Below are positions 30,501 through 53,808 of a stretch of DNA of 64,000 nt, piece after piece (within the stretch, counting starts at the first letter, position 1; every line of letters starts with the position of its first letter). The DNA is from Styela clava (Eukaryota), in the NCBI RefSeq assembly GCF_964204865.1, contig NC_135251.1, positions 9,486,001-9,550,000 of the forward strand, given 5' to 3'. Under the pieces are notes generated by a model. The model was not told where the DNA came from. It saw only the letters and a program-made list of their open reading frames with translations, and did not search any database. Made by a program: the position numbers and the translations under genes.

Positions 30501-33500
30501 TAAAATAATATATTTATGTGTATTTAAAATAAACTAGTGCATGCAAGAAAACATTCAACCTTGTGATAATTCACTTACTTCCATCAACGATACAATAAGC
30601 AGATGTAGCGCAGTCATTATACAAAGCAACACAGTGCACAAGTTGTATGTCAGATATCTGACAATTATTTATCGCCAAAGATCGTTTGATTCCGACGTGA
30701 ACTATGTCATATTTTCCTTCTGGTTCAACGATTACCTGGGTTTAAAAATGAAATTTGTAATATAAATTTTAAAAATCAGAAATTGTAATTTTATTATGTC
30801 TGATGAACTTTTTAATCGCTTTTTCGAAAGTGACGTATTGGGTTAATCTATTTATAAGATTTTTCTTGAAACAGTTACAGAAAATAAAGTTTTATTTTAT
30901 TCTTTATATTGTTTATAGGCTATGTTTATTACTACGTCACCATTACCGGAACTCAACAACAATATTGTCGCTGAATGAATGACACGAATATTGATCCCAC
31001 AAAAACAAAGCACTTGCATTTTTTCTATTTATTTTCTCATATAATAGTCGTATAATGCTTCTCGTACGACAAAGCTAAATATCTGTATACGAATCTCAAT
31101 AACATTGATTACCTCTTTGTTATTTCCAAGGCACCATTTTACTTGTGTATGCGGATCTTTGACGATGCATTCAAAGAATGCTCTTGTCCCGGAGTCAACT
31201 TTGTTTTCTTCAATGCCGCTTACAAACGCTGAATAATAGGAGATTGTCTTAAATTATAAACAACGTGACTATTTTTTCTATTTATGTACAAATCACACAA
31301 GGCGAACAAGAACACAGTTAGACTATCGCGTTGATAGAGCTAGGCCATGAATATTCTCATATGCGGTATTCGAAAGATAATTAATGAATGAATGAACGGA
31401 ATAGGAGGTAGTGGGATATATATTATTACGTTTAGTACAAAGTGTTTCGTTGCAATACATCAGCATTGCACTAACATATTCAGTGGAACAAGATGCAGCC
31501 GCTATTACAGATTCTTAATGGCAACAAATAGCATATCAACAGCGTGATGAATGACAAGTTTTTCTAAGAAATGTTTTATAAGCCTTATTTATAACAAGGA
31601 AATAGACTTGCAGTTTCTGACACTCACGTATATTCGCGCGTCATTGGTCGACAACGCGTTTTTGAAATCAACAGAATAGGATTTGAAACGAGCTTGATCA
31701 TAATACCTATATTTATAAGTGCTACTAGGGTTCGTGTAATGAGAAGAACTTTATTTACCTTGTCGTCTTTCTTCTTCCTCCAATGCACGTTTCTTCGCCA
31801 ATTCTTCTTCCTGCTTTTTCCGTCTCATTTCTAACATTGCATTTTGACGAACAACAACTAATTCTGTAACAGTTACAAAATTGAATTCAAACAGATAAGG
31901 CAAAATAAAGTTCAACATCAAATTTGAAATAATTTCCAAATATTTAAAATGATAAAAACTGGTATAAACTATCAAAGCTTTCTCACTAGAATAGTCTTGG
32001 ATTAAAATCAAACATAGAAAATTTATCTAATATTCGATTCCTGTGAATCATAAGGAAGAGTCAGACGAATATTAACGTTTTTCATTTAATCGAAGATTAT
32101 AAATTAGAACCCAAAAAATTTGTTTGTCAAGTGTAATACTTTAAATGCAATAGCATTTATAGGTAACCAACTGTAGGCCTACTGGCATAGGAAGATAAAT
32201 AGGTAAAGTCAGTCTGACTAGGGGGATAATAAGATAATGTGATGTTGTGAACATTTTATTCTGGAACGAATTTCAAGAAATATTTCAGGAGTATCTATAA
32301 ATGTAGTACTGGAAGTACCACATCTGCACAGCTCTATTATATTAGAGGTAACCTACCCCAGTCTTCTCCAGGAGTTACGAAGCACGACATAAGCGATGGT
32401 TTTCCGGTTCCAACTTTGTTTACAGCGCTCACGCGGAAGAAATAAGTTTGTCCTGTGACTAATCCATCTACTTTGTACTTTTCATCTCTGATTTCCTCCG
32501 GCATTTTATTACAAGGGATCCAGATTTCGCTTCCTTCTTTGCATCTGTTCATAAGCATGTTGATCACAATTTGTAATTTTCTTCTTTTTAAATTGGTCAT
32601 ACCCTAATTGGTTAACTTAATTCAACTAGGTTTACAAAATGTATGATACAGGTTAAATACATAAATTAAAACCCTGGTTTGAATCATTCTTGTCTGTGAC
32701 TTTGTTTTTATGAGCCATTACCTAATCAGTTACTGACAATTAAGGAGCTAATTTGTACTATTACGCTTCGGAATTGCGACACATCACTATTTTACACGAG
32801 TTTTGAACTATAAAAATACAATCTGCTGCGAAATACTATGTTCTCGACTTCAAAAAAAGCGGCTAAGTAACCGGTAATTTACCTTTCAACGACATATCCA
32901 ATCATTTCTGCGTCGCCCTTGCATTGTGGTGCTTTCCATTTCAACGAAACTGATTCCACGTCCATCGCCGTTATGAGGAGATTGCTAGGATAAGTGGGAG
33001 GCTCTGTGTAGATATTAAATTTTAGTCAGTGTTTCTGTACTCAAACAAACATAGTCACAAAGGAGAAAGAAAAAGTTCATGGTGATGGAAGTTACAGGCA
33101 ACTAATGATGTTCGACAAGTAACAAACATTTACATTTAATAAATCTAAAGTTTTAACAAATAGTATAATGATAACCTATTATATTGAATTATGTAAATCT
33201 TGACTGCACTTGTGATGATTGCAAGACTATTTGATCGCATTAAGTTGTACATCTTATATTTGTCCATATTAGTATACTCCATGCATTTTTGCTGGTACTG
33301 TCCTGGTCCTGTTGTGAAGTACTAAATGCTTCCGTAAACCAAGCCATATTATGGTCTAATATTATAACACACTACTTCCTAATGAAATAGATGTTCTAAA
33401 AGGACAGTTAATTAGAATGTACTCATATAGTTTGCGGATCTTTCTAAATTTATTTTACGAAGTCGTACTGGGACTTATCGAAAAACCTTTCTCTAAATTT

Positions 33501-36500
33501 TATTTTGAAGTTGATCATGAACGGAATTCTCATAATGAATCACCTGGATCTTTCACCAATACACGTCCTGGAAGCATTTTCCAATCACCGCTTCCAGCAA
33601 TATTGCAAGCCCTAACTCTGAACTCGAATTCTTCTCCAGTGTTCAATCCATCCACAGTAAAATGCCTCTGATTCAAAGGCTTGTTGTTTACAGGACGGAA
33701 TTTGCCACCGGCAGGACGACTGGAAAATGTAAAAATGATTAGAGTTTGTAGCTGTAAGATACTTCTGAGCATGGATACGAGCATACATATGCATTGATTG
33801 AAAAATAGGGGAAATTTAGAATTGCCGTATGCAAAAAAGATCGTCTTATAGGGTGGCTCAGTAAATAAAAACAGAACCTCGGTTTTTCGAAACATATTCT
33901 AGAGAGAACATAACTTACGGGCAATGCATTCTAAAATAAAATCTCGAGGCCTTGGCTCACCCTTGTCTATTTTCGAATATGCATCATTTTGAAGCTTTAT
34001 CATTATGAATTTGTATGCGCGTTGGTTACTAAATTGTACTAGTATTCGATTTTCGCCATACCGAAAATACACATTATACATTCAAGAAATAAAAAAAAAA
34101 TAAAAGAATGACATTTTATATTAAGGGAAGACCGGAAAACCAATACTGGTTTCAGAACAGAACAGAAATGAATACAACAATAGCAATTAAAAAGGCAAAA
34201 CATACATGAATATGAAAAAGTGTAAAGCATGTATAGGCAATCTGATGAAACTAACAGTCGTTTTTGTCAATTTCGTTTCCAATTTACCAGGACTTTTATT
34301 AACAATATCATAATTCAGAAATCTATATAGAAGATTATTACTAGATTCTTGTAGTAACTTACTATTCTAAAAAGTATCCGGTAACGGACGAACCACCATC
34401 AGTAGTTGGAGGATCCCAGCATATTTTAACGGAATTTTTAGTGACGCATGGTCTTCCTTTCTCATCTGCAACTCTGATTAGTCCCTGAACTCCGCCCCAC
34501 CAATTTGGTGGCTCTGAAAAAAAAGTTGAACGAATTAAAACTTTAAAATAAATTAGAAGTTTCGTAATTGGATATCATCCTACAATATAAATATTCTATA
34601 CAACTCTTTCAGTTATAATCTCTCCTAGGCAATATTTTATTTAACGTTCTTCTGTTGTGCATAGTGATGACATTTGATATATGTCATATTTGCAGGGTTT
34701 TAGTATCACGAATTTTCCTCTGAAACAAATACGGAATTGTTGCCGAAAAAGTTTTAAGAATGCTGTTGCCTTTCGATGAAAGATTGAATCATTTGAACGT
34801 GTAAATGTCAGCAAATAATAAGCAGATCTTGTTGAACAGAGCTAACTTATATTTTGGCAAAAAACGAACCATCCCATGCAGAGATTTGTTTCGCGTCACA
34901 GTATATTTGTGAGATATTTGATATGTTTGCTCAGGACAAGGATCTATAGCCATTAAAGAAATAACGATTAAAATATTATGAAGCACTTCGATATTAGAAC
35001 TTAATTTAATCTCAGAATAAAGCATACTTGCTTCGATGATGGACATATAGTGTTTGTTCCCAAAATACATAACATGTAATATCAATATTGTTAGGCAATC
35101 GCATCTATGTCAAATATTATTAAAAAGCTGAAATGACTGGAAATATTGTTATAGAAAAGCAATGATGAATCAAAACTTACTTATTCCATCAGTTGCTATG
35201 ATTGGTTCACTTTCTTCTGAGAACTGACTTGTTCCTCTTGAAGTGACAGCTCGCACTCGGAATACGTAAGATTGGTCGCTTTCCACGCCTGATACTGGAT
35301 AATGTGTCAGACTGTAATAGAAGTTCGACATTACGATTGACTCAACAGGACACTTTTAAATGAAACAAAAGCTTTAAAATATTCCAGATGCTCTAGTAAC
35401 TCCCGTTCAATACTTTAATGTATGAACTGTATAAACTATAAATATATATAAAAGCAAACGTAATACTGGCAAAATAAAATGACCTTCAATGTGTAGCAAG
35501 TTTAATGATAGTAGCAAACCTAATAAGTATTTGATCATATCCAAGTAATATACATATATTAATATAGACTCTCGGATTGAATGAAAACGTGCTGGATCCA
35601 AGGAGAGATAAATAGATGAAAGACTTACAAACAATGAAATGACGCTCACAAGATACCAATATAAAAAATGGCCTACGTGATTGGTGATTGATTACAAATC
35701 TTCCATCCCTCAGATCCAACCATCTTCATTTCAATGTAATACATCGGATCTTCTCCTGCTGTTTTGAATGGTGGGGTCCAACCAACAGTGATGTATTCTC
35801 GGGTTGCCTATGAAGTTGAAAGTTTATATTAGTTTATACTTCCATATACAACGTTCTTTATACTCTTTTTTTTTTAAATTATGTAATCATTTGTTGCAAT
35901 TAAACAGCATGGTTTTGCATATGGTCAAATTGTGCTCTTGTAATTCTGTGAAGTAGATATGGGTTCAGGTTAAAAAAAAATGTGTGTTATTTTACAAGAA
36001 CTACGCTGTTACGCTAAAACCTCTCTCGAACTCGAAATTAATAATATTTGATCAAATTCGATAATTCGACAAGCAAATTAATATAATTACTAAATGTCAT
36101 CAAAGTAAACTATACTGAGACAACTAACCGAAATAAAGCTGGGGTAGCTGAAGTTAAATGCGAACTACAACGAGTATTTCATAATTTAGGTAAAAATATG
36201 ATGGAAAGAAAATGGCATTTACAGTTAATCCTTTGACATCCACTGGAGCACTTGGAAGTTTACTTCTAACCACAGCGCTCTTTGGCTTCACCACAGTATC
36301 AGCCCCTTCTTTTTCTTTGATAATGTCTGTACTGTTCTCAACATCGCTCTGCTGTTTGGCATCAGTTTTGCCATCATCATTTGGCATTGCATCGCAGGCT
36401 CCTATTTCTTCTTGCGACCTCTTAGAGCAAAAAGTCGAAAGTCAACTGAGGGAAGAGCCCAAATTTTTATTTATTCTTGTGAGAATAGACAAATGTCATG

Positions 36501-39500: not shown

Positions 39501-42500
39501 GGATCTTCAAATTCTTAATAAAAATAATTCTCGTTAAGATGAGTTTATTCTGTTCTGTAATACTCTCATTCATACAGTAATGATATGCTGCTTACACCGT
39601 CAATTATCGAAAGTGGGCAACGCTTGAAAATCTCGACCATTTACTGGGAGACAAGCATGAAGTTTTTTGTCAAGAGTGATTTTAAAAAAACTAAGGTTAT
39701 GAGATACCCGTTTTCTAATAGCTCGTTCAGTAACATTTTGACCTAAATTGCATCCAGTTTGGGTCAGTTGGTATTTACCAATGCGTATTTCAACGTGATT
39801 ATTCTTTGTAACGTCAATAGTTCTTGGCACATCATTGGTTGCTCGAAATTTTGTAAAGAGTTCACCTGTTCATATGACTATGCTTTGAGCATATTTTCCT
39901 TCAATAATCTAGGCATCTCGTCAGTAAAAAACAAATAATAATTCTGATATCTTGCTATCAATTCTCATGTTTACCTTGTTGTAATCTTGGGGATCCGGCA
40001 TCTCTAATAGCAACCGCGGCAGAAGGTAGAGACGCTGCACTGGTACCCCATCTAGTGACGGCTCGGACACGGAGGAAATACACTCTCCCTTCTCCTAAGC
40101 CAGTTATTGGTGTCTTTGTAAGTCTTACTGGTGTCTTATTCCACGGTTTCCAAATACTAGATCCTGCTTCAGCTCTGTATAGCAAAAATGATGAGATTTA
40201 TAATTTATTGTAACTAAACAAAAGTAGCGCTTCGCCCTGTGTTTTTTTCTGCATTGTACATACAATTGCTATCATTTCAGGCAAGTTCTTATATGTTCAT
40301 TATATGCCTGTACAATACTTACGTTTCTATTATGTATCCTTCAATTGGTGCTCCACCAAAATGTCCTACGTAACCAGGGCCTTTCCATGACAACATGACG
40401 TAATCACGGGTTGCTTCCGATATCTCGACACATGATGGCGCTGAAGGCGGGGCATCCGAACCCTGAACTCTAACGTAACATCGTGAAGTGGCTGCACCAC
40501 TCGAATTGAAAGCGCGACAGCAATATTCTCCTGTATGAATGTATAATTTTTCAATTGAGAAATAGCATAATAAAGAGAATAATGTCAATGTTAAATTATA
40601 CATTCTGTAAAAAGTAAAGTAAAAGAATGAATTTTTACTTGCAGGCTGTCAGTTAGCATGTTTTTATTGACTAATTTAGAAACTGTTTTTAAAATTATTT
40701 AGCTCAAAATTCAGACAATCAACAATGACTCAGATTGTTATTCTTTAAAAACAACATTTGTTGAACAACAAACACGAGAATATCGGTCGGAGACTGAAAA
40801 CTTATCGATCGAAACTGCAGTTTCGATTTATGACTCTATATCACTAATTAAATGATAACTCGCTAATTATACGACATAATTCATCCATTAATAGGCTTCT
40901 GGTCAGAGATATGATAAATGCACATGCAAAATTTGGAGCAGATTCAACCTCGCCTTCGTGAGATATCGCGTTCATCTAACAGACAAACAGACAGACAAAT
41001 ACCTATCAACATATCTACCGATCTTAAGATCGATAAGTAATAACCACCCAAAACTTTATGCGCAATCGATAAAAAAAATTCGTAGCTTTAGTGGAATTGT
41101 TTAGATTGGCAAGACTTATGGATTTTACTTATTACTTCCCATATATCAGTTTGCCATCATCCGCACAATTTATTGGATAGAGATAAACTTTAGCCTTAGA
41201 TCTTGAACTCGCCATGCAACACGAAAAATAGGAGACAACAAAATATCGACAACTGTTATACCTTCGTCGTCAGTGTGAACTTTTAATATCGTTAATGTTG
41301 CTTGTTTTCCATCAAATGAGGACTGAATATGTGACGAAGTTTCTTCAATAGTTCTTCCTTTAAATAAAACGAGTTGTTTCATTTATGTGCCCAATATATC
41401 ACACCCACATATATTGCAATCATTTTGTTGAGCTCATGGAATGTAAGTGAAATTTTGAAATCCAACTGTATGCCTAAAAACCTGTGTGGAACATGGTACT
41501 TAATGGGTAGTTAGAACCGAATCGGAATAAAGATAGATACAGAAATGTGGCAAGTGGCTGAAACGAGAATATCGGTCAATAGGCTATAGGGTGCCAAAAC
41601 CATGGGTTAGGGTTAGTATGGGTTAAAATATCCGTGAAACAAAAATATTCCCATAGGTGCAATAGTATACAGGTGCAATTGTCATGGGTTCAAATGTACA
41701 TGAGTTCAAATGTAATGGAACCAGAATATACAGCCCTGAATTTTTGACTCTAAATGAATTGTTTGATTTAAAAACGGAATTTAGTGAGCCAAGAAGATAA
41801 TTTTCTTTTTTGACTAAGATAAAAGTTGGGCGCTCCCGTAGTATGTGCACCAAGATGGCGGACACCGGAAAATAGTATGTGTGCCAGGTTGGGGCTAGGC
41901 CATAATTCTATTCCAATTTTCCTTATTTTAGTTCTATTACGATTTTGGGGACTAGCCAAGTGACTCCTGTAGTATTAGTACCTAAAATTTTGGTCTAACC
42001 CTAACCTGGTACATATACTACGTTCCGGTGTCCGCCATTTCGGTTCACATACTACGGGAGTAGCAAAAATTGTGACATAACTTTAAAATTTTGAAATTCT
42101 AGGATTTAACGTGTTTCGATATCAGCACTTACCATTCAGAGTCCAAAATACTTCTGGGTCGGGAGATCCGTCAACTTCACAAGTAATGATCATTGCTTCA
42201 CGTTCTTGCACTGTCTTCCCGTACAGTGGAACAACGAATCGGGGGTAACCTGAGATTTATTATACGCACGCATTATATTTGAAGCAAGCAGATGAGGCGT
42301 ACATACCCGGAACATAGATTCCGGGCAGATAGAGAGCTCAAAGGGCTGTAATATATTTATTTCCCATGGCGGCACTGTGGATGTATATGCCATAGGATAT
42401 AGGGTGTCCATAAAGTTTTTTAAATTGCAAAAGGAATTTGTCGATACCACATATTGTTTTGGCCCTCACAAATGTAATAAATGAAGAAAAAATACTTAAA

Positions 42501-45500
42501 CAAATACTTATTAAAAACAACAAACCTGGTTAAGATATATTGAGAACTGACTTCATACCAAAATAAAAATTGTAAAGAGACCTCATGGACACCCGTACTT
42601 CTTCTTTGACCAAGCCATTTTTTTTTATCTTAATTTACCACCTAGTCTATTTACATAGTTATCTTTCCTGACTGACTTTCTACCTGACTGACTAAGTCCC
42701 TTCCGATAAAACACACAGGTTAATTTTTACCAAAGAAACAAAACAACATTCAATATAGAATCGAGCAAGGGAAATTAGAAACATCAGAAAAATATCCTGC
42801 CCAATGAATGTGTGCGACCGTTAGTGCCTCACCAGATGCATCGATCAGGACAATAAGCAATAAAACATTAAGATACACTAATACTAAGTAATATGTTTAT
42901 ACTCAAATACTTGTGGCCGGTGTGACAAGAAGCCTTTTCTTGAACTGTTTACCAACCTCATATGGGCTTAAAATCAATTGTTTACAGATAGTATTTTTGC
43001 CCTTTGAAAAAGACATTTTGTATTAAGTATTACTAAAACTGCATTTGAGCATAATGTTAACCCAGGACGGCATTTCAGTGTTTCAAAGAAGGTATTATAA
43101 TTACACCGCGTGATCATTTCTATTAATATAACTCCAGAATAAGGATTATTTCGGGTTAAGAGGATCTTTTGGTTATGCTAAGTTTCGTCAAATTTTTTTT
43201 TACCTAAGGCAGGATTACCGGTAAATATACTATAAAAGTGTTCGTTGTTTACTGTGTTTATGTAGTATAATATATTTTTAAATGCAAAATTTCAATAGAA
43301 AATTAAGAGCCGAAAACTAAGATTTGGATGCAAAAATATCATCAATTTCCTAAATTTCAAATTTTAAGTTTTTTTATTCAACATTTTTTAATTAGGATTT
43401 TTACAGCATGTTGCTGGTATCAAAAAATAAAATTACTTCTTTATAAAAATATTTGCGATCAAATCTCACAAATGTCAAAATTTATTCCTTATTTCTGTCT
43501 GTGATAATATGTTTTCAATTACTGTTTTCAGAACCCCAATTGTTAATTTCCATATTTTTCACTCCGATTTTTCAGCTGTTTCAGATTTTTGTTCTGCATC
43601 TTTTATTTTCTCCTTTGCCAGAGTTTTTTCAAATGTTTCCAGACTACCCCGCCTTTTCTCATTCGTCACATTAACTTCTATAGCGACTTTAAATGTTCCG
43701 CTTTTTTTTCTTCCGCTAGGGTCGTCCAAGCTAACCTCGCTACTATAACTTTTGATGACGTCATCGGTGGTGTCATCTTTTCTATCCCCGGAGGAAGATA
43801 GCGTGCCTGTCGCCTCGCTGACTTGTTTTGTAGCATCGAGTATAGCGTCATTGACTATATCTTTAGCTCCAACCGTGATGTCATCTGTGTACGTCATTGG
43901 CTTGTTTGCCAATTCTGATAGAGCTTTATCGCTATTTGTTATTTGTTTGTCTAGCTTCGCTTCTTTTATCAGTTGTTTGACGTCAAAATCCAAATTCTCG
44001 AGTTGTGATCTAAATTGACGATGAGCGTCTGTCTCGGGAAGCTTGTCGTATTCCTTAACTTCGATTGCTCCCGCGTGAGGACGCTTCTCTGTTAAAAAAA
44101 ATAATTCATATTTTATTTCTAGAAGCTTACAGCGTGCGGTTTGGTATAAATATTGTTATGTCTCAATTTCCTATATTTCTAGATATGAAAATACCAATAA
44201 TATTTGTGGAGGAAACGTAAACTATGATAAATTTATAGTGTTCAATTGACAAGTCCAAGATTGCAGATTTTTCAACCATTTCGAGTATAAATACCTACGA
44301 TATCAAATTTTACAGTTTGGTATGAATCGAGATGCAACAACGACATTCTAATTTATTATATTTTTAATATTGATATTGGAATTCGGCTACTTTCTATCTA
44401 TGCAAAAATATTCAGTTCTCTAGAAACCATATTTAATAAAGTTTAGAAAAAATATTTTAATTTCAAAAATGAATATGAATTACCTTCAACAAGCTGATGA
44501 TGAATCAGATGGGGATGAAAGTGATGATTTTGATGATGATGGATGCCAAAATAATATGAAATGATGATGAGAACTCAATCCCGTAACCGCAACGCTGCTC
44601 CATGTTGTTCAAAACCTAATTTTCTAACATTAAATCTCGAGTAATATTGTTGAAGTTTTTTACAATAACTACAGTCTTGAAGATTTCAAATCAAAATACA
44701 GCTAATTCTTTCTTTAGAATAAAAAAATGGAAAACTTTTCTGAAATATTTTTCCGAAAGGATATTGTTCTCTATCTATCTGCGTTCCTTCTGCAATATTT
44801 AAAACTATATATTGTAATATTTTTCCTCAACGCAAAATCGGAGCTTTTATTAATAATCTATATTATATCTCATTCTCTATATCTCATGAGTTTCCGCATG
44901 CGTCGCATGCATTCTATCCAATAAGCTAAGATATAGATAACATTATGAATCTAAGATGACCCTTCGAATTATTCCAACGATAGTTAGTAATTTCATCTAT
45001 CTGTCTGAAATCTACAAATTTAATGTTTTTAAACATTGCTGTTTTACGTGGTTTCCAAGCTTTTGACTGACAGAACTATTTGTCCCCAACTCTCTTTCTA
45101 TATTTTCCCTTTCTATAATGTAAATAAACTATCTTTTCTCTTTTTTCCATAAGACTGAAATCTGGGATTAAACATGACGATTGTCTAGTTCTTGTTTTGG
45201 CATAGCCAATGAGAGTACAAAAATGGGTACTCCCTTAGCGTATGTACCAGGTTAGGGTTAGTCCCTGATTTTATTTCGATTTTCCTTATTTGAATTATAT
45301 TACGAGTTCGGAGACTCTCTGTGTTAACCAAGTGAATCCCTTCACACAATATGATGTAAAGGAGGCGAACAAAATTAGTTACCTCCATATTGATACACCC
45401 ATTTCAGGAGGGCCGAAAAATGACTGCATGAAATAATGGCAAAAAAAAATTAAAGTGAACATACCAGGTATATTGAGCCCCTCTACGTCTGGATAATCTG

Positions 45501-48500
45501 TCGGTTTCTTCAAGTTGTATCCGGATTTAAAATCGACGACTCCGATTCTGCCTCCGTCGTATCGTCGGACTACCAATGTAGCATAACTTGAGATTTCTCC
45601 TTTTCGGTTTTGCATTGATACCCGGTAGGTACCAGAGTCTTCGATTGAAGCTCTGAAATATGAAAAATATAATTTGATGAGTATTTTTTTTTAATTTTGA
45701 AATTGTAACTAATAAAAAATATGGACATCACTAGGTCTGGGAATTTCGAATCGAACCGAATAGTAAGTTATTCGTATCGGTTCAGACGAGAATTTCGAAT
45801 TGCCGCCATCTTGTTTGGTTTTTTGTTCGCCCTCGGGTCGAGGGGAAAATCTCCCTTTTTTATTCACATTATAATTTTAAAATGCAATTGTGACATATAT
45901 ATGACTCTTTTCTTCCGAGTGTGTTATTGATGAAACATGTTTCTCTCTGTGTCTGAACAGCAAACTGTTTATATATGATAGATTACGTGTTTTCATTGAT
46001 TTATGTATCTGAAGGACCTATTATAATAAAACAGTCAATACAAATTCATATTTTCCAAGTATTCGAGATTTGATTCGATAAAATATTCGATTCGATTCTA
46101 AAATCAGAAAATATTCTAAAATGCCCAAACCTAGACATGATGAGAGTCTGTTCGCAACGTTCCTAAACTTGCGGTTTGCTTGAACATCAGCTCAAGGTGG
46201 CACATATTCACAGTATTGTTTAAAACAATAATTCACCTCAAGAAATATCATATAAAGAAAATGGAAACCATTCCTTCCTATTTTTCATCCTTTAAACTTT
46301 AAAGGCGATCGGTGTCAAATACACAAAATATTACTACCCTGAAGAGTTTTACATGTATTATTCTTGATATATACCTCGTTACTTCGCCCTTGCTGAAGTT
46401 CAAGAATTAAAATGCGAAAACGTTAGGCAAAAGATACCTGCAGATCTCTAGAGTGTGTAATCCAAACTGGTTTGATATTTTAAATTTTCCTGGACTACAC
46501 AGCGATGGCTCGAGTGGCACCATGTCTTTGTACCATGTGACTCGGGGTGTTGGACTTCCACGCACTGTGCAGGTAAATTTGACGTTCATCTGAAAAGTTC
46601 AAAAAAAATTTCAAATCAAAAAATTTTCAATTTAATAAATATTGTTTGTATCTTGTATGGTTAATATAATGTGAAAATAGAAGCATCATGGATTAATAAA
46701 TTGATATGTCTATTTGGGATAGGCTATAGACTTCTGATTATGAAATACAAACTATATTAATATTCAGTATTATGAAAATTGATTATAGAAATGTTAAAAA
46801 AATAAAAATCGAGGTATATATCAATAAATATTGTTTTCTGAAGCTGCATGAGATGTTTTATTTTGTTAATCTTTGTTTATTTATTTGTTTATTCATTTTA
46901 ACCTTGACTCGGAATCAATGAGTTTTGGGTATTCCCGAAGCATGTGAACCAAGATGGCGGACACCGAAACGTAGTATGTGTACCAGTTCATGGTTAGGCC
47001 ATAATTGTGAGTACAAATACTACGGGAGTCACTGGGCTAGTCCCCGAACTCATAATAGAGCTAAAATAAGGAAAATCGGAAAAATATTATGGACTAACCC
47101 TAACCTGGCACACCTACTACGTTCTGGTGTCCGCCATCTTGGTTCAAATATTTCAGGAGTATCAAGTTTTATGTCTTTAACTGAAGCCATTTTATTACTG
47201 GGCAAATCATGCTTTAGTTATATTTTCATTTTTTCTCATATCAAGTGATCATTGTTTAAATTACCTTTTCCCACACTACATGTGATCTCAGTTTCATATC
47301 AAACATTGGAGCTTTGTCTAGTTTTCCTCGCTCCAGACTTTCTTCGACATCTCTGTCGGTGATAACAAGTGGACGTTCAATTCCTCGGTAGCGGTATCTG
47401 AAAATATTGTGAGTCTTTTGGTGTATTTTCTAATGTTTAGTACAAAATGCTATTTTCGAAGAGCTTTAATTTTTTATAATAATATTGAAATAATGAATCT
47501 TTATTCACTGGGGTAATTCTCCCTCCTCCTTTGCAAACATATAATCAGGTTTTAAGTTATTCAATTATAGACTCTCACTCTGGAATAGTCGTTACACAAG
47601 TTGTTTATTAGACTTTATAGGTGAGGCGATACGTGCCTCGTACTAACTTGATCTTATTAACCCATGAAGCCAATTTAATTTCTTCCAACCAGTCAACGGC
47701 AATATATAGTATTTCGGTAATTGTCGAAATTTGCAAAACTCGTGGAAACAAAATGGATACGAGAATATAGCTTTCTGCTAGACCAGAGGTGGGCAAGGTT
47801 TTTGAATCAGGGGCCAAAAATATTTCCCACCTAGACTGGCGGGCCTAGTAAGTGTGACGCAAAAAGTTGCATTTTATGAACAATATTTATAGTATTATAA
47901 AATCAAAAGTGGAAAAAAAAAGCCTCGAGCTAAAAGTAAATTCGATTGCAATCGCAACAAATTCCTTGGACTACTTTCTAGCTAAAACATCAAAATTCGG
48001 TTCGAGTTTGGCATCAGGCGGGCCGGATCTAAATACCCAACGGGCCGTATTAGGCCCAAGGGCCGAAGTTTGCCTATATCAGTGCTCACACTTCATTGAA
48101 ATACAATGGTTTCGTAGTTGAAAAGAGCTCCAACTTTTGTCTGTTCAACAGCAACAGGAAGTTGTTTTGTGAGATGAGTTGGGAGATAAAGTTAATGCGA
48201 ATTTGTAGATTCATTGTAATATTACTCACTGATAGTTAGGGTTCTTGTAGTATTGCATTTCATCATCGTCTTCGACGGCAAACTGTTTTCTTTTTGCAAT
48301 GTATCCGGCCACTGATCGAATGTTTTCGTCTTCTTCAGCCATGCCAGGGTCTCCTCGCCTGTGAGTTAGGTAAAAAAATATTCAAATGAACTGGTGATTG
48401 AATTCTATTTTGAATTCTATATTTTTGTTCGATGGATCCTTCATCGTCGCATGGATGGAGCTTGTTAATTTCTACGGCATCTCTTCCTGAACCAACCCAT

Positions 48501-51500
48501 TCAAATGACTCGCCATTCTCTCGCAACCTAATTTGATTAGCACGGGAGAGAGGCTATTTTATACACTTTAAGCCGATTTACTCAATTTCACCACCTCCGA
48601 GTGAAATGTAAATATCTTAACATAATATGCCACCACACCAGCTCGATATAACCTAGTGATTTTTTAACAAACGCGTATCATTCGACGGACATAACATATA
48701 GAATTAATTACGTGTATTTTATTAATAATTTAAATCAGATGTGTGACTACCATCCATAATTTCCGGAAACTTATCTCCAATTTTATAATTTAAAAAAATC
48801 ATAATGGAGTATTGTTATTTAGTTGGTTCTGTAAACAATATACGAAGATAAATATTTCAGTTTCTTACTTTCTCATCGGAGGTACAGCGTATCCAAAGTC
48901 GGTATGAACTAGAGGCTCCTGTGATCGTTTTCTCCAGTTGAGTATGGACTGCAATTCCTCATCTTGTTTTTGTTGTCTTGAAGGCTGACGGCGCGGCTCA
49001 TCTTCATATTGCTGATGGCGAACAGAGCGCTGTTGATGTTGACGAGATGTTTCTATATCTACGTCATCGTATGTTTCATTGTACTGAAATAGATTTATTT
49101 TCGTAAAACGGCGACGATTAGAAAGAAAAACAAACTTTGAGGAAAAACAGCTATGCGTTCGTTATAGGTTTATATGTTATCTGTTTATCTCCGTGGACGA
49201 CAATCTGTTTTTGCAAATCGCTTTCACTCATAACAACATGGCATCTGACAAACAGTTAACGAAGATTGAAGAGGTACTATTTAGGTAAAAACTGAGTGCT
49301 TATGAACATCGTTGACTACCCAAGTCATTTTGCCTTGGGTGAAGTCGTGGAAGTGAGAGTTTAGACCAATATCTTTATCCTTCAACTCCTTCAATTCGGA
49401 AATAGTTTGAATTATGTTACCCAAACTTGTTGGGGCCAATCCATTTGGTTGGGTATGCCGGAAGCGAAAACTTTTCATCTTACTAATCGCAAGTTTTGTT
49501 TATGTTTAAGTATCTGTTTGTAAGCCAATCTGTTCAATACAATAGGAAAATTTATTTATGGAAAATGTTTTTTAGGAATTTTGATATTATTTGATTTCCA
49601 TTGCATATTTACATTATTTTGCTTTAAATAAGATTGCAACTCTAAAGTTCAACATAGCCAGTCAAAGGAAGATTATATTCCCAAATGCCGATAGCATACG
49701 TCAATTAGATTTTAGCATGACCAATGCTCTTGTTGTTCGTTAGCCTTTGCTAAATGCTTGAGTTACTATAAATCGTTATTTTTGATCAAATAATTCCCCT
49801 GGGGTGAAATTAAAGACATAACTATGTGCGGATAATTTAGTTCAGTTGCTAATATTAGAAATGAAATAACATTTCCGAGTAATTATGGTATTTCTATACG
49901 GGAACAATATGTCATAGCAGAGACGTTCGTGGGCCCGATTCAGAAGCAGTATCAAAAAACAACTTTGTTGATTGAAAAACTGGACGATTTTTGCACTATA
50001 ACATTCAAGTAAACGGACATGGAGGTTTGCGTGATTGAAACGCGAAAATATTGTAATACAACAACAGCCATATTATGGTTACCGTGTGTGATATTTAAAT
50101 GTAAAAGCTAAAGTTTCAAAAAAGAGCCCTATATCAAAATTGTCGCCGTATGGCAAAACAAGATGTATATGCGACGTGAAAAAATGCTTAAATAAGGGCA
50201 GAGCTAAGCTTCTCATAAAAAGAAACTCGCGTAAGTTCTAATGAATAGCACTTGATAATTATACCAGCAACTGAGAATGAGTATCCTAAGTATCATCGAA
50301 CCACAATTATTCGTTGTATTGAGCGCTATTCTGTATATTCAGCAACTATGCATTAGAAAATTGAAAAAATTGACTAAAACTCAGAGCTTGAGCGTAAGTG
50401 ACTAAAATATTTGTTTCAATATTCAAAATAGGGGATTAAATTGTACAAGCTTAACAAAGACAATCTTTAATATTCCATTCGAAGTATGTTTGTCATCTTC
50501 TATATATAAATATACATATATACATATGTCTGTCCACTTGAAAGAAGCTAACTTTGATGTTAAATATAATACAATTCCACTCACATCATCCATCTGCGGT
50601 CTTTGTTGTCGTCTGGGTTCTCTGGGTGAAGGCGAACCGTATCTGATATCATTTGATCTGAGACCAGATCTTCCAATACGAGGTTGATATGTCGGTACTA
50701 ACGGTTCCAATGGCTCATCAAAGTCATAATCGTCGTATGTTTTGAGGTCAAGTCTGCGACGGCTGTAAATTGAATTATGCAAATAGTGGTAAATGACTGG
50801 ATAAAGGTATGATGACTGATGATAGTTTTTGGATATACAGTAAAATTCAGAGATGCAATAAGCGTAGACAAATTACGTTCGAATAGACTTTCAAAATTTA
50901 TTTGCTTGTATGGAAATGAATGTATTCATTTTAAGGAGACGTTTTCGTACAATACATTAAAAATCAATTCTCAAATTTCAATAAATTTTTCCATTAAATG
51001 CTGAACGTTATGGCATTTTTGAAAACAAAAATACAGTAGCCTTTGAGTCGGAGAAGTAAAATATTTATTCAGTTTTAACTTATTAAATTGAATTTTCGTT
51101 TACACCATTTGTTTCAAACACTATGGAAATATACGTAAGGATAACTTCACCAACACTCCCTCTCAAGAATAAGTAAACTAATTTGTTAACTTAATACATA
51201 AAGACCTATATCGAATAAACTAAATTAAAAAAAAAAAAATTATACAATACTTTTCTACGGATTGTCTACGTCTCTCCTGCATATGCTTAATTTCTTCTTC
51301 AATTTCGTCGTCGTCGGCATTGTTGAATTTAAATTGTTGTTGTTGTGGAGCTTGACTGCTCTATAATTAAAATAAAACATCGGGTTTAAATACTTCGTAA
51401 GAGTTGCAAAAACAAACAAGAGTGAGAACGTATGAATCTAATTTGAGCATAAGCATATTATTTGAAAAGTAAATCTCTTCTTGGCTGTTAATATTAAACT

Positions 51501-53416
51501 CAGAGAATATTTTCATGAGAATAAAATGTTGATATTTTTATTATATTAATTCAGCGCAAAGTTTCTGTATTGAATAAGGACTCGACAGAAATTTAAGGCT
51601 AAGATGCATATCATGTGATTGCATTACATTACTCAATATGGCGTTGGTTGCATTTAGCCTAAGATTAACAACTTCACAAAGATAGTCATAAAATTACATC
51701 CTAGTCCTAGAATTAACAAAAAGCTAAAATAGTATTGCATAGTTTCGTAGTTTTCATATAGACAAACTGGAACGACTCAGTGGGGAATAGGCTATATATT
51801 TGAATTTATTCAAAGCCATTGTGCAGCGAATTGCTTGGACTCACGTAGATTGAACAAAAATAAAGGATCAACTTACTACTCCCACTTCAAATCATTGAAT
51901 TAGTAATATTTGACAAAACTATAATGTAAACGGACCTCCTGAAGGATGCGCACCAAGATGGTGCACAACCTGAACTCAGGTTGTGTACCATGTTAGGATT
52001 CATGGTTAAGCGACATCTTGGTGCGCATACCTCAGGAGTACCATGTAAACTTACTCTATGTGAGGGGGATACGCTTCTTCTCCCAACAAGTGGAACTTGC
52101 AAAGGAGAGCTTACTAGCGACATCGTTCGACCTTCTTCTGCATCTTCTCCGCCAAATCTGAGAGAAAATGAACTTTCATGAAAATTCAATATCTCCATGC
52201 CAATAATTTAACGAAACAAAGTTACTATGGCAACGTAAATAAATTATAGACAAAAAAAGCAATGCAAGATATATTTACAAATTGGTGTAAGACTGTCCGT
52301 ATCTTTACAATGTTATTTGAGTCCAACTACCAGCTCACCAAAATTGATAGCCTATCTATATGTTATCAGTCGAAAACCGTGTGACGCAATTTCTATATTT
52401 AACAAATGCTGGAATGTAGCACACGAGGCATCAACAAGATTACTTCGAAATCATAATTTACCATTAACTATAAGAACACAAACATCCTCCAAAACAAGAA
52501 TTTTATGAAACGATTCATGGCCATAGTGCCCAATGATAGGCAGAACCAAAAATCACTAAAGACAATGAATACAAGATCACATTAAGATAGCGGTGCTCCT
52601 CAAGTACGCGCACCAAGATGTCGCATAACCTGAACCCTAACCTGGTACACAACCTGAGTTCAGATTGTGCGTCATCTTGTTGCGCATACTTCAGGAGGTC
52701 CGAGATAGCTACATTAAACAATAGTATCAATGAGTTTTATTTTTAGCTGGTTAGCATTAGGCTCTAATTACATTCATTGTAAAATAATAATAAATAAGTA
52801 TGATATACGAGTATATTAGATGTTAGTTTCGCAATTAGACAAGGTAGCGAATAAAAAGTCAAATATAAAAAGTTAATATTATGACACATGCAGCCCAGTT
52901 TGTTTACGATATAGGAGTTGCATAAATCTGGGAACTGACACCGATATCCGATCAATTTAATAATAAGTTCTGATAAGAAAGGTTAAAAACACTGACGTTT
53001 CGAAAGTAATTACAGTTTAATTTCATTTTTAATTCCCAATACGTATTCATAATCTTCTTGATATCCTTGTCAATTTTTTGGACTTTTCAATATACTGACA
53101 CAAAACATACAATAAATAACTTTGAAATAAAATCAAATAAAATCTCACCTTTGACCATTGAAAAGCGACGTTCTGGAGAGTCATAACGATTTAATTTTAA
53201 TTTTCAATTCTTAATATTCATTTATAGCGTTTTTGGTATTGTTGTAAGAGTATGCATATTATATTATACACTGATAAGCAGCATAAAATAAATATTTTTT
53301 AACGAAAAACCTCACCTTCGTGACCGTGCAAAATCACGTGATCCATGGTCTCGTGTGTAGAAAGAATATTCATCTCTGTCGTGGTGTTCACCTCCTTGGG
53401 AATATCGAACAGGCAT
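21585..53416 (-). CDS. MYOM: Myomesin-family M-band protein, full-length isoform (head-Ig2-FN3x5-Ig5-acidic tail), 42 coding exons, ~1855 aa
   Basis: Manual splicing: all introns are GT-AG and all phases are consistent. Exons 5'->3': 53416-53316, 52157-52055, 51360-51251, 50762-50585, 49083-48869, 48358-48230, 47397-47265, 46589-46438, 45652-45465, 42249-42133, 41357-41262, 40530-40323, 40174-39975, 39513-39433, 38744-38652, 38267-38144, 37624-37527, 36833-36748, 36420-36223, 35807-35677, 35311-35181, 34513-34363, 33719-33544, 33003-32883, 32544-32357, 31863-31759, 31228-31113, 30735-30579, 29940-29843, 29454-29280, 28772-28643, 27971-27893, 26785-26650, 26050-25905, 25603-25459, 25048-24897, 24568-24526, 24021-23960, 23339-23226, 22836-22746, 22560-22340, 21674-21585 (TAA). 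The first Ig (APMFDMKLRSHVVWEKMNVKFTCTVRGSPTPRVTWYKD..PGKFKISNQFGLHTLEICRASIEDSGTY..SSYATLVVRRY) closely matches myomesin My2 as I recall it. The 2 Ig + 5 FN3 + 5 Ig order is the myomesin architecture. Confidence 0.9.
22340..31228 (-). CDS. MYOM: Myomesin C-terminal five I-set Ig domains with helical linkers
   Basis: Ig motifs: AFFECIVKDPHTQVKW; ASFSCTLTRDDAKVTWSKNG..RYEIISDGNKRNLVLKNCAVNDVASY; WYHNGERV..KYEIIKDGNRRILKILNLNYEDSGEIIC; IRLYCVVAKLRDDVKIFWYKD..GTYTCE; ITWMKN..DDAGTYTCKI. Confidence 0.85.
27192..27520 (-). mobile_element. tRNA-derived SINE (second copy ~59265-59560)
   Basis: Two dispersed copies share ttaatcatatggcgaaccac..ctct.gtccggtta and gcgagga...agcaatcc; B-box-like GTTTCGAATCCC on the minus strand. 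Confidence 0.6.
27711..27846. repeat. Intronic hairpin, 62-bp arms (55/62 Watson-Crick), 12-nt loop
   Basis: 27711-27772 pairs with 27785-27846. Confidence 0.9.
29685..29806. repeat. Tandem duplication, ~63-bp unit x2
   Basis: aatcaatactaatcatcttt.ctacgtgcacactttt..aaatgacaacaa occurs twice. Confidence 0.85.
32357..40530 (-). CDS. MYOM: Myomesin block of five fibronectin type III domains (with insert after FN3-2)
   Basis: Five repeats of P..P...W..P....GY/MY.(I/V/L)E....W/F...N....(Y/F).V.GL..G..Y.FRV.AVN..G, e.g. DYVMLSWKGP..GYIIE..YFLRVRAVTRWG and FTVDGLNTGEEFEFRVRACNIAG. Confidence 0.9.
36950..37360 (-). mobile_element. Decayed non-LTR retrotransposon (CR1/L2-like) RT fragment
   Basis: Minus strand 37359-37302 reads LYFGVPQCSVLWPIMFLIV, a degenerate form of the GVPQGSVLGP.LF RT motif. 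Confidence 0.55.
38816..39040. repeat. Tandem duplication, ~117-bp unit x2
   Basis: atgtataaatagctttga...gtttttgacaataaatcaaattttaaa...tcagttgttcaaa occurs twice. Confidence 0.85.
40773..41043 (+). mobile_element. Helentron/DINE-like non-autonomous element
   Basis: aaaatttggagcagatt...gagatatcgcg + (ACAG)n microsatellite and a terminal hairpin (ccgatcttaagatcg); no TSD seen. Confidence 0.4.
41590..41722. repeat. Dispersed repeat family (also 63762-63910; looser relatives at ~9000-9290 and ~18090-18355)
   Basis: Shared ccatgggttagggttagtatgggtt..tatccgtgaaa..cataggtgcaatag.atacaggtgca and GGTTCAAATGT subterminal repeats. Confidence 0.65.
41829..42064. mobile_element. Merlin-like MITE, long form
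   Basis: TIRs as above; TSD AAAAGTTG/AAAAATTG. Confidence 0.8.
43481..43486 (-). terminator. Probable polyadenylation signal of the short myomesin isoform
   Basis: AATAAA ~73 nt after the TGA of the alternative terminal exon. Confidence 0.55.
43559..44088 (-). CDS. MYOM: Alternative terminal exon of the myomesin gene (short isoform ~612 aa)
   Basis: Strong acceptor ttttttaacag at 44089-44090 in phase 1, matching the donor at 45465. The 530-nt open frame (EKRPHAGAIEVKEYDKLPE...AEKSE*) ends in TGA at 43559-43561. AATAAA lies downstream at 43481-43486 and 43373-43378. No phase-compatible donor was seen. Confidence 0.75.
45732..46133. mobile_element. hAT (Ac-type) MITE
   Basis: TAGGTCTGGG...CCCAAACCTA termini, TTCGA subterminal repeats, degenerate TSD GACATCAC/GACATGAT. 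Confidence 0.65.
46928..47163. mobile_element. Merlin-like MITE, long form
   Basis: TIRs as above; degenerate TSD. Confidence 0.75.
47265..53416 (-). CDS. MYOM: Myomesin exons 1-7: low-complexity N-terminal head (My1-like) leading into the first Ig
   Basis: Translation begins MPVRYSQGGEHH..., continues through R/Q/D/E-rich exons, and contains FGYAVPPMRKRGDPGMAEEDENIRSVAGYIAKRKQFA. Splice phases 2,0,2,0,2,2,0 chain without stops. Confidence 0.8.
47784..48083. mobile_element. Degenerate hAT MITE
   Basis: CAGAGGTGGGCAA... left end and ...GGGCCGAAGTTTGCC right end, with GGGCC subterminal motifs. Confidence 0.55.
51932..52042. mobile_element. Merlin-like MITE, short ~110-bp form (others 52592-52701, 57950-58049)
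   Basis: Related TIRs; perfect TSD ATGTAAAC here, 7/8 TSDs at the other two copies. Confidence 0.8.
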
Positions 53417-53572
53417 CTCGAACTCGAACTTTCAATTCCTAACTATAATAATAAGAACCCCTGTAGTCTGAGATATAAAGAATGATGTTGAGAAAAATAA
53501 AAGAGTGAAGATAAATCTGAAGTTTGAGTGTGAAGGATATATGCTATTGTAGGGATCACATATTGGTCAGTT

Positions 53573-53808
53573 GGTACTCCCGTAGTATGTAAACCAAGAT
53601 GGCGGTCACCAGAACGTAGTATGTGTACCAGGTTTGGGTGAGGCCATAATTTTAGATACAAATACTACAGGAGTCATTTGGCTAGTTCCTGAACTCGTAA
53701 TAGAACTAAAATAAGGAAAATTTGAATAAAATTATGGCCTAACCCTAACCTGGTACACTTACTGTGTTCAGGTGTCCGCCATATTGGTTCACGTACTACG
53801 GGAGCGCC
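53573..53808. mobile_element. Merlin-like MITE, long form (other copies ~3265-3504, 20238-20484, 41829-42064, 46928-47163; partial copy at ~45225)
   Basis: ~75-bp TIR GGT(A/G)CTCCCGTAGTATGTGAACCAAGATGGCGG..GGTTAGGGTTAGGCCATAA; perfect 8-bp TSD GGTCAGTT; 7/8 TSD at the 41829 copy. GGNRM termini with an 8-bp TSD fit Merlin/IS1016. Confidence 0.8.

What the first reader, a model, noticed from the sequence alone, without database searches (positions are those of the whole stretch)
43373..44088. Alternative terminal exon producing a mini-myomesin (head + one Ig + novel 176-aa tail)
Seen: a 530-nt stop-terminated exon with a strong phase-matched acceptor and its own AATAAA signals, inside the intron between the first and second Ig. 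The tail is charged and partly helical, with PKA-type motifs (KRRGSL, RKKSG). The upstream donor (45465) can join either this exon or exon 42249. Established: titin novex-3 is made by the same logic, and I know of no equivalent for vertebrate myomesins. Inference: one locus yields an ~1855-aa cross-linker and an ~612-aa myosin-binding short form, perhaps for non-striated body-wall muscle lacking M-bands. This is the best candidate for an undescribed system in the window.
Basis: partly seen in the sequence, partly recalled or inferred. Interest (0 to 1): 0.75.

Follow-up and report, generated by a model that had tools for sequence, protein, structure and literature searches.

The report
Short myomesin form from alternative last exon
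A sea-squirt muscle gene of the myomesin type makes, besides its full-length form, a truncated form that ends after the first Ig domain in a unique tail conserved in other species; this is a real but fairly ordinary kind of isoform switch.

Summary
A polypyrimidine/AG acceptor at 44088 opens a 530-nt stretch that is in frame with the upstream donor at 45465 (phase 1). It ends at TGA 43561-43559 and is followed by AATAAA/ATTAAA signals.

Contigs of public runs, whose record does not say RNA but which skip introns with GT..AG ends, join 45465 to 44088 in 4 of 4 runs laid (3 studies). They join 45465 to 42249 in 1 of 4. One locus therefore gives both a long Ig-Fn3 protein and a short head-Ig-tail form. 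Contig depths suggest the ratio flips between samples.

The tail matches no Pfam family. In an exhaustive search of 1.84 billion proteins it has three credible relatives, all unnamed ORFs, 39-44% identical. They share two conserved blocks and an invariant RRxS site.

- RNA continues about 0.7 kb beyond 43373.
- The second "PKA" motif is not conserved.
- Protein sizes, tissue use and the 5' end were not verified.

The body-wall-muscle idea is untested. I found no paper describing such a myomesin form. I rate it a new member of a known kind (truncation through an alternative last exon, as in titin Novex-3). Interest is moderate.

The parts
43559..44088 (-). Coding part of the alternative last exon: acceptor ag|A at 44088, 175 whole codons plus a split first codon, stop TGA at 43561-43559
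   Evidence: Sequence and translation. Spliced joint 44088/45465 with GT..AG ends in 4 of 4 runs. Longest open run of the window, 0 of 2000 simulations as long.
42667..43558 (-). 3' untranslated part as far as contigs of the runs reach. AATAAA at 43486-43481 and 43378-43373, ATTAAA at 43392-43387. True 3' end(s) unknown.
   Evidence: Contig pieces 43468-43592, 43279-43444, 42797-43497 (X5), 42731-43061 (X2) and 42667-43084 (X6) (table 8). Signals. Contigs cannot show ends.
45465..45652 (-). Shared exon, second half of the first Ig domain plus linker. Its donor (G|gt at 45465, phase 1) is used with either acceptor.
   Evidence: Weak I-set match, E 0.042. Joints to 44088 (4 of 4 runs) and to 42249 (1 of 4).
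46438..46589 (-). Shared exon, first half of the first Ig domain
   Evidence: I-set E 2e-8. Joined to 45652 in 4 of 4 runs.
47265..47397 (-). Shared exon upstream of the Ig core (linker and first strand)
   Evidence: Splice sites read. The loose end of the X5 short-form contig beyond 46591 is the reverse complement of this exon's last letters.
42133..42249 (-). First exon specific to the long form (start of the second Ig domain), acceptor phase 1
   Evidence: I-set E 9e-6. Joint to 45465 in X6, on a 1695-nt contig of depth 34.1.
41261..41356 (-). Next long-form exon (second Ig domain, middle)
   Evidence: Joint 41356/42132 in X6. I-set E 0.0055 on the open piece 41173-41382.
43940..44065 (-). 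Conserved N-terminal block of the tail (codons 8-49)
   Evidence: Conserved in the 3 of 3 sequences that cover it; P0005 does not cover it.
43625..43693 (-). Conserved C-terminal block of the tail (codons 132-154), with RRxS at codons 145-148 (43654-43643)
   Evidence: F132-E143, R145, R146, S148, E153 and K154 are invariant in 4 of 4 sequences.
48230..51360 (-). Four head exons placed by eye with matching phases: 51360-51251, 50762-50585, 49083-48869, 48358-48230. Start codon not found; at least about 250 nt of transcript lie further upstream.
   Evidence: splice sites and phases read by eye and not checked by reads. The X5 short-form contig has 1015 nt beyond 46591, against 765 nt for these four exons plus 47397-47265.

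Best explanation
This is a genuine alternative last exon of a myomesin-type muscle gene on the minus strand.

After the exon that completes the first Ig domain (donor at 45465), the transcript takes one of two routes:
- It is spliced to the nearby acceptor at 44088. The message then ends in that exon. The product is the N-terminal head, one Ig domain and a 176-residue charged tail that is probably disordered.
- It is spliced 1.8 kb further on, to 42249. The message then continues through the second Ig, five Fn3 and further Ig domains.

Shown here: both joints exist in RNA-derived contigs, they share the same upstream exons, and the tail's reading frame and two sequence blocks are conserved in three other, unnamed, organisms.

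Inferred:
- The choice is a regulated competition between the proximal acceptor plus cleavage/polyadenylation and the distal acceptor.
- The short protein keeps whatever the head binds but cannot cross-link. In vertebrates the head binds myosin, by recall. The short form lacks the Fn3 and C-terminal Ig parts.
- The invariant RRxS in the tail is a site for a basophilic kinase.
For: Spliced joint 44088/45465 with CT..AC on the plus strand (GT..AG on minus) in 4 of 4 runs laid, from 3 studies. Its depths are 18.8, 44.9, 216.2 and 3.67; the shorter side of the joint is 187, 187, 188 and 21 letters.

Joint 42247/45463 (cut +2, i.e. 42249/45465) in X6, depth 34.1, on a contig that also holds 41261-41356, 45463-45652 and 46438-46591.

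No depth in 4 of 4 runs at 44092-44278, just on the intron side of the acceptor, so this is not intron retention.

Contig depths of short against long form: 216 against 5.5 in X5, 3.67 against 34.1 in X6 (a rough measure).

The frame is phase-matched and stop-terminated. The open run was reached by 0 of 2000 simulations.

Three relatives of the tail are P0002 (E 8e-121 by construction; 44% identical), P0003 (E 8e-51; 40%) and P0005 (E 6e-6). They share two conserved blocks and an invariant RRxS.

Codon 15 is K in the window. It reads E in 4 of 4 runs, which is the residue of P0002 and P0003.

The tail is single-copy in its own genome. It overlaps none of the repeats found in 41000-47500.
Against: All evidence is from assembled contigs. 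They cannot show 3' ends, strand or true levels, and they drop rare variants.

The kind of the runs is a guess in the record ('RNA?'). I infer RNA from the skipped introns.

No poly(A) end was seen, and contigs run on past all three canonical signals.

No protein evidence exists.

Two of the 4 differences listed in the tail change the residue, against 0 of 7 in the Ig1 exons, so constraint on the tail is weaker (10 further differences were not shown).

The homologous ORFs carry no organism, name or context. Their first residues look like read-through of an acceptor, so they do not show splicing in those species.

The long-form joint was seen in only 1 of 4 runs.
Confidence: 0.85

Rival explanations
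1. The exon is used, but the product is noise or a decay target. On this view it is opportunistic intronic polyadenylation or a 'poison' exon that merely lowers output of the full-length protein, and the tail has no function of its own.
For: Intronic polyadenylation is common in animal genes (abstracts listed). Half of the listed differences in the tail change the residue (2 of 4). The stored model of the homologue P0002 has no confident fold (pLDDT 0.49, pTM 0.15).
Against: The frame stays open over 175-210 codons in three diverged sequences. Two blocks are nearly invariant: 20 columns are invariant across the 4 sequences. P0002 and P0003 are 54% identical to each other. The short form is the junction assembled in 3 of 4 runs, at depths up to 216. 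No joint from inside or behind the exon to 42249 was listed (4 joints were not shown).
Confidence: 0.07
2. The tail is also, or instead, a small gene of its own, transcribed from inside the intron or trans-spliced at 44088. Its product would be a tail-only protein.
For: P0002 and P0003 are stand-alone ORFs that begin with M just before the conserved start of the tail. Tunicates use spliced-leader trans-splicing (recalled; an earlier AI note on leader genes of this genome appears).
Against: In 4 of 4 runs the exon is joined in cis to 45465, and no run has depth at 44092-44278. In the window the frame upstream of the acceptor has no ATG; the first ATG of the frame is at codon 64 of the frame translated, which is P0001 of 112 aa and would lose the whole N-terminal conserved block. 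The first residues of P0002 and P0003 read like translated pyrimidine tract plus ..cag|G, which is what a prokaryote-style gene caller makes of unspliced DNA.
Confidence: 0.05
3. There are two separate genes: a head-Ig-tail gene ending at about 43400 and an Ig-Fn3 gene starting at 42249 (a split myomesin).
For: In 3 of 4 runs no contig joins 45465 to 42249.
Against: In X6 a 1695-nt contig of depth 34.1 runs 46591-46438, 45652-45463, 42247-42132, 41356-41261 and on at both ends. Its joints have GT..AG ends. Contigs drop rare variants, so the three misses are weak evidence.
Confidence: 0.02

Closest known systems
Titin Novex-3 (recalled, not from a call: an alternative exon with its own stop and poly(A) site gives a short titin)
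   Same: A giant or large sarcomeric Ig/Fn3 gene in which an alternative last exon lies inside an intron. The short form keeps the N-terminal binding end, gains a unique tail and loses the distal part.
   Different: A different gene (myomesin type), with a much earlier cut after a single Ig domain. The tail shares no detectable sequence with anything named. Partners of the tail are unknown.
Drosophila sallimus giving kettin by alternative 3' end (recalled, not from a call)
   Same: A truncated N-terminal isoform of a modular muscle protein made by early termination, with use that depends on tissue or stage.
   Different: An insect gene of another family. For the present locus, tissue dependence is only suggested by opposite contig depths between runs.
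EH-myomesin, the known splice isoform of vertebrate MYOM1 (passages read in PMC8482499); also the myom2a exon 16 cassette in zebrafish (passages read in PMC9770155)
   Same: Regulated alternative splicing of a myomesin gene, with a disordered extra segment.
   Different: Those are in-frame cassette exons in the middle of the molecule, and they keep the full domain set. Here the protein is cut off after the first Ig and ends in a new tail.
Vertebrate myomesins MYOM1-3 as a family
   Same: The order of exon pieces is head, Ig, Ig, then Fn3 pieces, then Ig pieces. Myomesin-1 My4-My5 (5fm5) is the best one- or two-domain solved match of two Fn3-bearing exons, at 50.7 and 63.9 bits.
   Different: One later Ig exon is nearest to MyBP-C and titin, not to myomesin. 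No vertebrate counterpart of the tail was found.

Membership tests
Alternative last exon ('skipped terminal exon') isoform, Novex-3 type | One upstream donor joined in RNA to two alternative acceptors | tested here: met
   45465 joined to 44088 in 4 of 4 runs and to 42249 in 1 of 4, all with GT..AG ends.
Alternative last exon ('skipped terminal exon') isoform, Novex-3 type | In-frame stop codon inside the alternative exon | tested here: met
   Phase 1 donor and acceptor, 176 codons, TGA at 43561-43559.
Alternative last exon ('skipped terminal exon') isoform, Novex-3 type | Own cleavage/polyadenylation site before the next constitutive exon | tested here: inconclusive
   AATAAA at 43486-43481 and 43378-43373, and ATTAAA at 43392-43387. 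Contigs continue to about 42667, and contigs cannot show ends. No joint from behind the exon to 42249 was listed.
Alternative last exon ('skipped terminal exon') isoform, Novex-3 type | The truncated protein is made | not testable with these tools
   No proteome or ribosome data. Indirect support only: conserved frame and blocks.
Myomesin family (MYOM1-3) | Architecture: unique head, 2 Ig, 5 Fn3, 5 Ig | tested here: inconclusive
   The first 4 exon pieces: I-set on 3 Ig pieces (E 2e-8, 9e-6, 0.042), none on the tail. A further 20 open pieces scanned at E<=0.01: fn3 on 5, I-set on 2, none on 13. The count of five Fn3 and five later Ig units was made by eye.
Myomesin family (MYOM1-3) | Closer to myomesin than to titin, MyBP-C or obscurin | tested here: inconclusive
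   5fm5 myomesin-1 is the top one- or two-domain chain for exons 40322-40558 and 32340-32603. Multi-domain titin chains sum higher. It is weaker for 33533-33898. MyBP-C and titin are best for 29260-29454. The Ig1 exon is nearest to titin and receptor phosphatases.
Myomesin family (MYOM1-3) | C-terminal dimerising Ig (My13) and M-band location | not tested
   Outside this finding. Another first-stage note on the window (s1-807493) questions the My13-type end.
   R145, R146 and S148 are invariant in 4 of 4 sequences. The second motif, RKKSG, is not conserved (0 of the 2 other sequences that cover it).
   Needs a kinase assay or phosphoproteomics.

The most novel reading that the evidence does not exclude
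The short form is not a side product but the main adult product of the locus. On this reading it is a tunicate-specific thick-filament accessory protein, made of the head, one Ig domain and a phospho-regulated disordered tail. It would serve muscle that has no M-band (the non-striated ascidian body wall). The full cross-linker would then be switched on only in striated larval tail and heart muscle. One gene would toggle between 'bind myosin' and 'bind and cross-link' with muscle type.
Probability: 0.25. Interest if true: 0.6.

Novelty: new member of a known kind. Interest (0 to 1): 0.45.

Why it matters
Myomesin is treated as the obligatory cross-linker of the M-band and as a chordate (tunicate plus vertebrate) invention (passage read in PMC11203038).

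A naturally occurring form that keeps the head and first Ig but cannot cross-link would be a ready-made dissection of the protein's functions. It is abundant in some samples and has a conserved tail.

It would also bear on how ascidians build both striated and non-striated muscle from one gene set.

It gives a concrete target: an exon of 530 coding nt that can be deleted or tagged without touching the long form.

Practically, gene models of tunicate myomesin should carry two 3' ends. Expression counts taken from 3'-biased data will otherwise confuse the two forms.

Tried and rejected
Pfam on the tail gave 0 families at E<=1.

The word-index protein search gave only the window's own ORF and P0002. 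It sees only proteins of 0.55-1.75 times the query's length.

The exhaustive profile search gave 5 hits. I dropped P0004, a 1908-aa protein made of Calx-like repeats with 11 weak stretches (sequence), as a composition or chance match. That left P0002, P0003 and P0005, plus the window's own P0001.

Cluster look-up gave no names or accessions.

The scan of JGI metagenome contigs matched 101 stretches to a pattern, and none was a relative.

The Atlas does not hold the window's tail. For the homologue P0002 the best feature hit scored 0.76 and all TM scores were at or below 0.41, so no kin and no fold.

tblastn of the tail against the window found no second copy and no likeness to the long form's linkers; the best other E-value was 3.7.

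Rfam found 0 families in 41000-47500.

I considered an internal donor in the tail exon (GAG|gt at 43736/43735), which would turn it into a cassette. It is phase 0 and runs into a stop when read into the exon at 42249, and no such joint was listed. Rejected.

Literature searches found no paper on a truncated or alternative-last-exon myomesin, nor on tunicate myomesin isoforms:
- myomesin + Ciona, 5 papers, 3 listed.
- broad, ill-posed, 2,671 papers.
- myomesin + short isoform, 26 papers, 15 listed.
- ill-posed, 194 papers, none of the 20 listed holds myomesin.
- myomesin + Styela, 2 papers.
- myomesin + terminal exon, 9 papers.

The library lacks most subscription journals, and supplements were closed. 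Automatic gene models (RefSeq, ANISEED) could not be consulted and may already hold this isoform.

I did not resolve the start codon, the 5' end or the 3' end.
Full report
WHAT IS THERE

The gene lies on the minus strand. I read the exon borders directly.

- The first Ig domain is coded by 47397-47265, 46589-46438 and 45652-45465.
- The last of these ends ..CCT G|gtatgt, so one base is carried over (phase 1).
- A run of nine T, then AACAG, precedes position 44088. From there the carried G plus AG starts a frame that stays open for 175 further codons to TGA at 43561-43559.
- The next exon of the long form starts at 42249 (ag|GT TAC.., also phase 1) and ends at 42133.
- On their own, the open pieces score as Ig I-set: 46440-46589 at E 2e-8, 42134-42247 at E 9e-6 and 45466-45651 at E 0.042.
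- AATAAA lies at 43486-43481 and 43378-43373, and ATTAAA at 43392-43387. A further AATAAA at 43607-43602 is inside the coding part.

IS IT MORE THAN CHANCE?

The stop-free run through the exon is 198 codons. It is the longest in any of the six frames of the whole window; the next are 169, 149 and 144. None of 2000 first-order Markov simulations of the 3215-nt intron, scored on both strands, reached it (mean 91, maximum 179).

IS IT EXPRESSED AND SPLICED AS CLAIMED?

The look-up of sequencing runs, queried with 43373-44088, listed 15 runs.
- 13 hold the stretch or part of it, and 11 of those hold at least half of the sampled words.
- Nine are labelled 'RNA?' (a guess) and come from three studies.
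- Four are labelled '?' and come from a fourth study that may be the genome's own data.

I laid 4 of the 15 (X1 and X2 of study P1, X5 of P2, X6 of P3) on 41100-46700. All four are kept as contigs. I infer RNA from the fact that these contigs skip the introns with CT..AC on the plus strand, which is GT..AG on the minus strand.

- The joint 44088/45465 is present in 4 of 4 runs. Depths are 18.8, 44.9, 216.2 and 3.67. The shorter side of the joint is 187, 187, 188 and 21 letters.
- The contigs that carry it are 1333, 1333 and 1883 nt in X1, X2 and X5. They continue through 45652/46438 and beyond 46591.
- The loose end of the X5 contig beyond 46591 is the reverse complement of the end of exon 47397-47265.
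- The joint to the distal acceptor (listed as 42247/45463, cut +2) is present in 1 of 4 runs. In X6 it lies on a 1695-nt contig of depth 34.1 that also holds 41261-41356 and the same upstream exons.
- No run has any depth at 44092-44278 or 44653-45213. At 44279-44652 there is 3.3-5.9 in X1 and X2 and at most 0.71 in X5 and X6. The exon is therefore not a piece of retained intron.

RELATIVE AMOUNTS

With the caution the tool itself gives (one depth figure per contig), the isoform-specific contigs point to a switch.
- In X5 the short form stands at 216 and the only long-form piece (41261-41325) at 5.5.
- In X1 and X2 the long-form exons have no depth at 41100-41473, and 1.1-2.7 at 42222-42408.
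- In X6 the long form stands at 34.1 and the short form at 3.67.

I cannot say what tissues or stages these runs are, because their names are coded.

THE 3' END

Contig pieces continue behind the stop.
- Two allelic versions of 43468-43592.
- Two allelic versions of 43279-43444.
- 42797-43497 in X5 (700 nt, depth 56).
- 42731-43061 in X2, and 42667-43084 in X6.

Neighbouring pieces overlap by 30 letters, as neighbouring unitigs do. In X5 the depth falls from 216 to 127 (the two alleles summed) to 56 across the canonical signals. That would fit partial use of proximal sites and a longer 3' UTR for the rest. Contigs cannot show ends, so this is inference. There is no canonical hexamer between 43372 and 42362.

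IS THE TAIL A REAL CODING SEQUENCE?

It has no Pfam match at E<=1.

The word-index search found one relative, P0002: 214 aa, 45% identity over 95% of the query. A profile of the two sequences, run against all 1,835,955,588 representatives, gave five proteins at E<=0.001.
- P0002.
- The window's own 112-aa ORF, P0001.
- P0003, 211 aa, E 8e-51.
- P0005, 78 aa, E 6e-6.
- P0004, a 1908-aa repeat protein that I set aside as a chance match.

In the four-way alignment, identity to the window is 44, 40 and 39%. P0002 and P0003 are 54% identical to each other.

Two blocks stand out.
- Codons 8-49 are conserved in the three sequences that cover them.
- Codons 132-154 have F132 to E143, R145, R146, S148, E153 and K154 invariant in all four.

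At codon 15 the window has K. All four runs read the base that gives E, which is the residue of P0002 and P0003.

Of the differences that one search listed (10 more were not shown), 2 of 4 in the tail are synonymous, against 7 of 7 in the two Ig1 exons. In X5 the coding piece has 4 differences in 526 letters. The piece behind it has 20 differences and 3 gaps in 700.

I therefore could not see whether they too lie between two Ig exons. Their first residues read like a translated pyrimidine tract and ..cag|G. That suggests unspliced DNA read by a prokaryote-style gene caller, with an acceptor at the same place.

The tail is single-copy in its 377-Mb genome. It has no likeness to the rest of the window and overlaps no repeat.

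The Atlas's stored model of P0002 has pLDDT 0.49 and pTM 0.15, and no neighbour above 0.76. This fits a mostly disordered, charged tail: 36 acidic and 30 basic residues of 175, with short conserved segments. My own structure prediction could not be run.

WHAT THE GENE IS

Stop-free pieces downstream of 42249 read, in order, as the rest of an Ig, then Fn3 pieces, a charged helical-looking linker and further Ig pieces.

Of 20 pieces scanned at E<=0.01, 5 hit fn3, 2 hit I-set and 13 hit nothing. That is expected of half-domains. By eye I count five Fn3 and five later Ig units, the myomesin layout.

Against solved structures:
- The Fn3-bearing exons match multi-domain titin chains best in sum. Human myomesin-1 My4-My5 (5fm5) is best among one- and two-domain chains, at 50.7 and 63.9 bits. 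The match is weaker for another Fn3 exon.
- An Ig exon at 29260-29454 is nearest to MyBP-C and titin. This agrees with another first-stage note on this window.
- The Ig1 exon is nearest to titin and receptor phosphatases.

'Myomesin-type' is therefore reasonable but not proven here.

Earlier AI notes of this scan call the genome Styela clava. I did not test that.

THE HEAD

I placed four upstream exons by eye with matching phases: 51360-51251, 50762-50585, 49083-48869 and 48358-48230. Together with 47397-47265 they sum to 765 nt.

The X5 short-form contig has 1015 nt beyond 46591. If all of these exons are included, the short message reaches at least about 250 nt further upstream than 51360. 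The X6 long-form contig has 776 nt beyond 46591.

Both forms thus share the upstream exons as far as can be seen. The start codon was not found, and the sizes of 612 and 1855 aa remain unverified.

HOW IT MOST LIKELY WORKS

Shown: a choice between two acceptors for one donor.

Inferred:
- The proximal acceptor has the better pyrimidine tract (13 of the 19 bases before its AG, against 10 of 20 for the distal one; counted by eye). The short form may therefore be the default, and the long form may need the proximal site or its poly(A) signals to be passed over.
- By recalled knowledge of vertebrate myomesin, the head binds myosin, the Fn3 region binds titin, obscurin and creatine kinase, and the last Ig dimerises.
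- A head-Ig-tail protein would sit on thick filaments without cross-linking them. Its conserved RRxS could make that regulated.
The opposite isoform ratios between runs are compatible with it, but nothing here tests it.

COMPARISON AND NOVELTY

The logic is that of titin Novex-3 and of kettin from sallimus (both recalled).

The known myomesin isoforms I could read about are in-frame cassettes: EH-myomesin (passages in PMC8482499) and zebrafish myom2a exon 16 (passages in PMC9770155).

[quoted passage not shown] PMC13078634 lists MYOM1 as a marker in Ciona heart cells (passage).

Six searches found no paper on a truncated myomesin or on tunicate myomesin isoforms. The library is partial, supplements were closed, and automatic annotations could not be checked. 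With the short form this abundant, a pipeline that uses RNA-seq may well already model it.

I therefore class it as a new member of a known kind. It is real, conserved and apparently regulated, and of moderate interest.

Noticed in passing
window 41833-42069, 46923-47159, partial copy 45236-45316: Palindromic, MITE-like elements of about 237 nt sit in the introns. Their terminal inverted arms are 76-78 nt and 83-85% complementary. The bins that hold them reach depths of 7,000-34,000 in the runs laid, so the family is very abundant in these contigs. Similar peptide-like read-throughs recur elsewhere in the window, for example near 20316-20483, 51887-52198, 53443-53661 and 57877-58122.
   Followed up: partly
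window 42409-42595: A further short stretch in the same intron has depth 7,100-9,300 in all 4 runs and many loose ends at 42510-42513. It is probably another repeat family or an abundant unrelated RNA.
   Followed up: no
window 44044 (codon 15 of the tail): The assembly has the base giving K. All 4 runs laid read the base giving E, the residue conserved in P0002 and P0003. The reference individual carries a minor allele or an error.
   Followed up: yes
window 51360-51251: The most upstream head exon that I placed begins at an acceptor and is open from its first base. An out-of-frame ATG in it opens only a 21-codon frame. The true first exon and start codon lie further upstream.
   Followed up: partly
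window 29260-29454: This Ig exon of the long form is nearest to cardiac MyBP-C (57.1 bits) and titin, not to any solved myomesin Ig. It fits the separate first-stage note s1-807488 on MyBP-C/obscurin-type Ig domains.
   Followed up: partly
window 36157-36441: A charged, Ser/Asp/Lys-rich open piece sits between the second and third Fn3 units of the long form, with no Pfam match at E<=0.01. By position it may be an EH-like insert. It shows no likeness to the tail.
   Followed up: no
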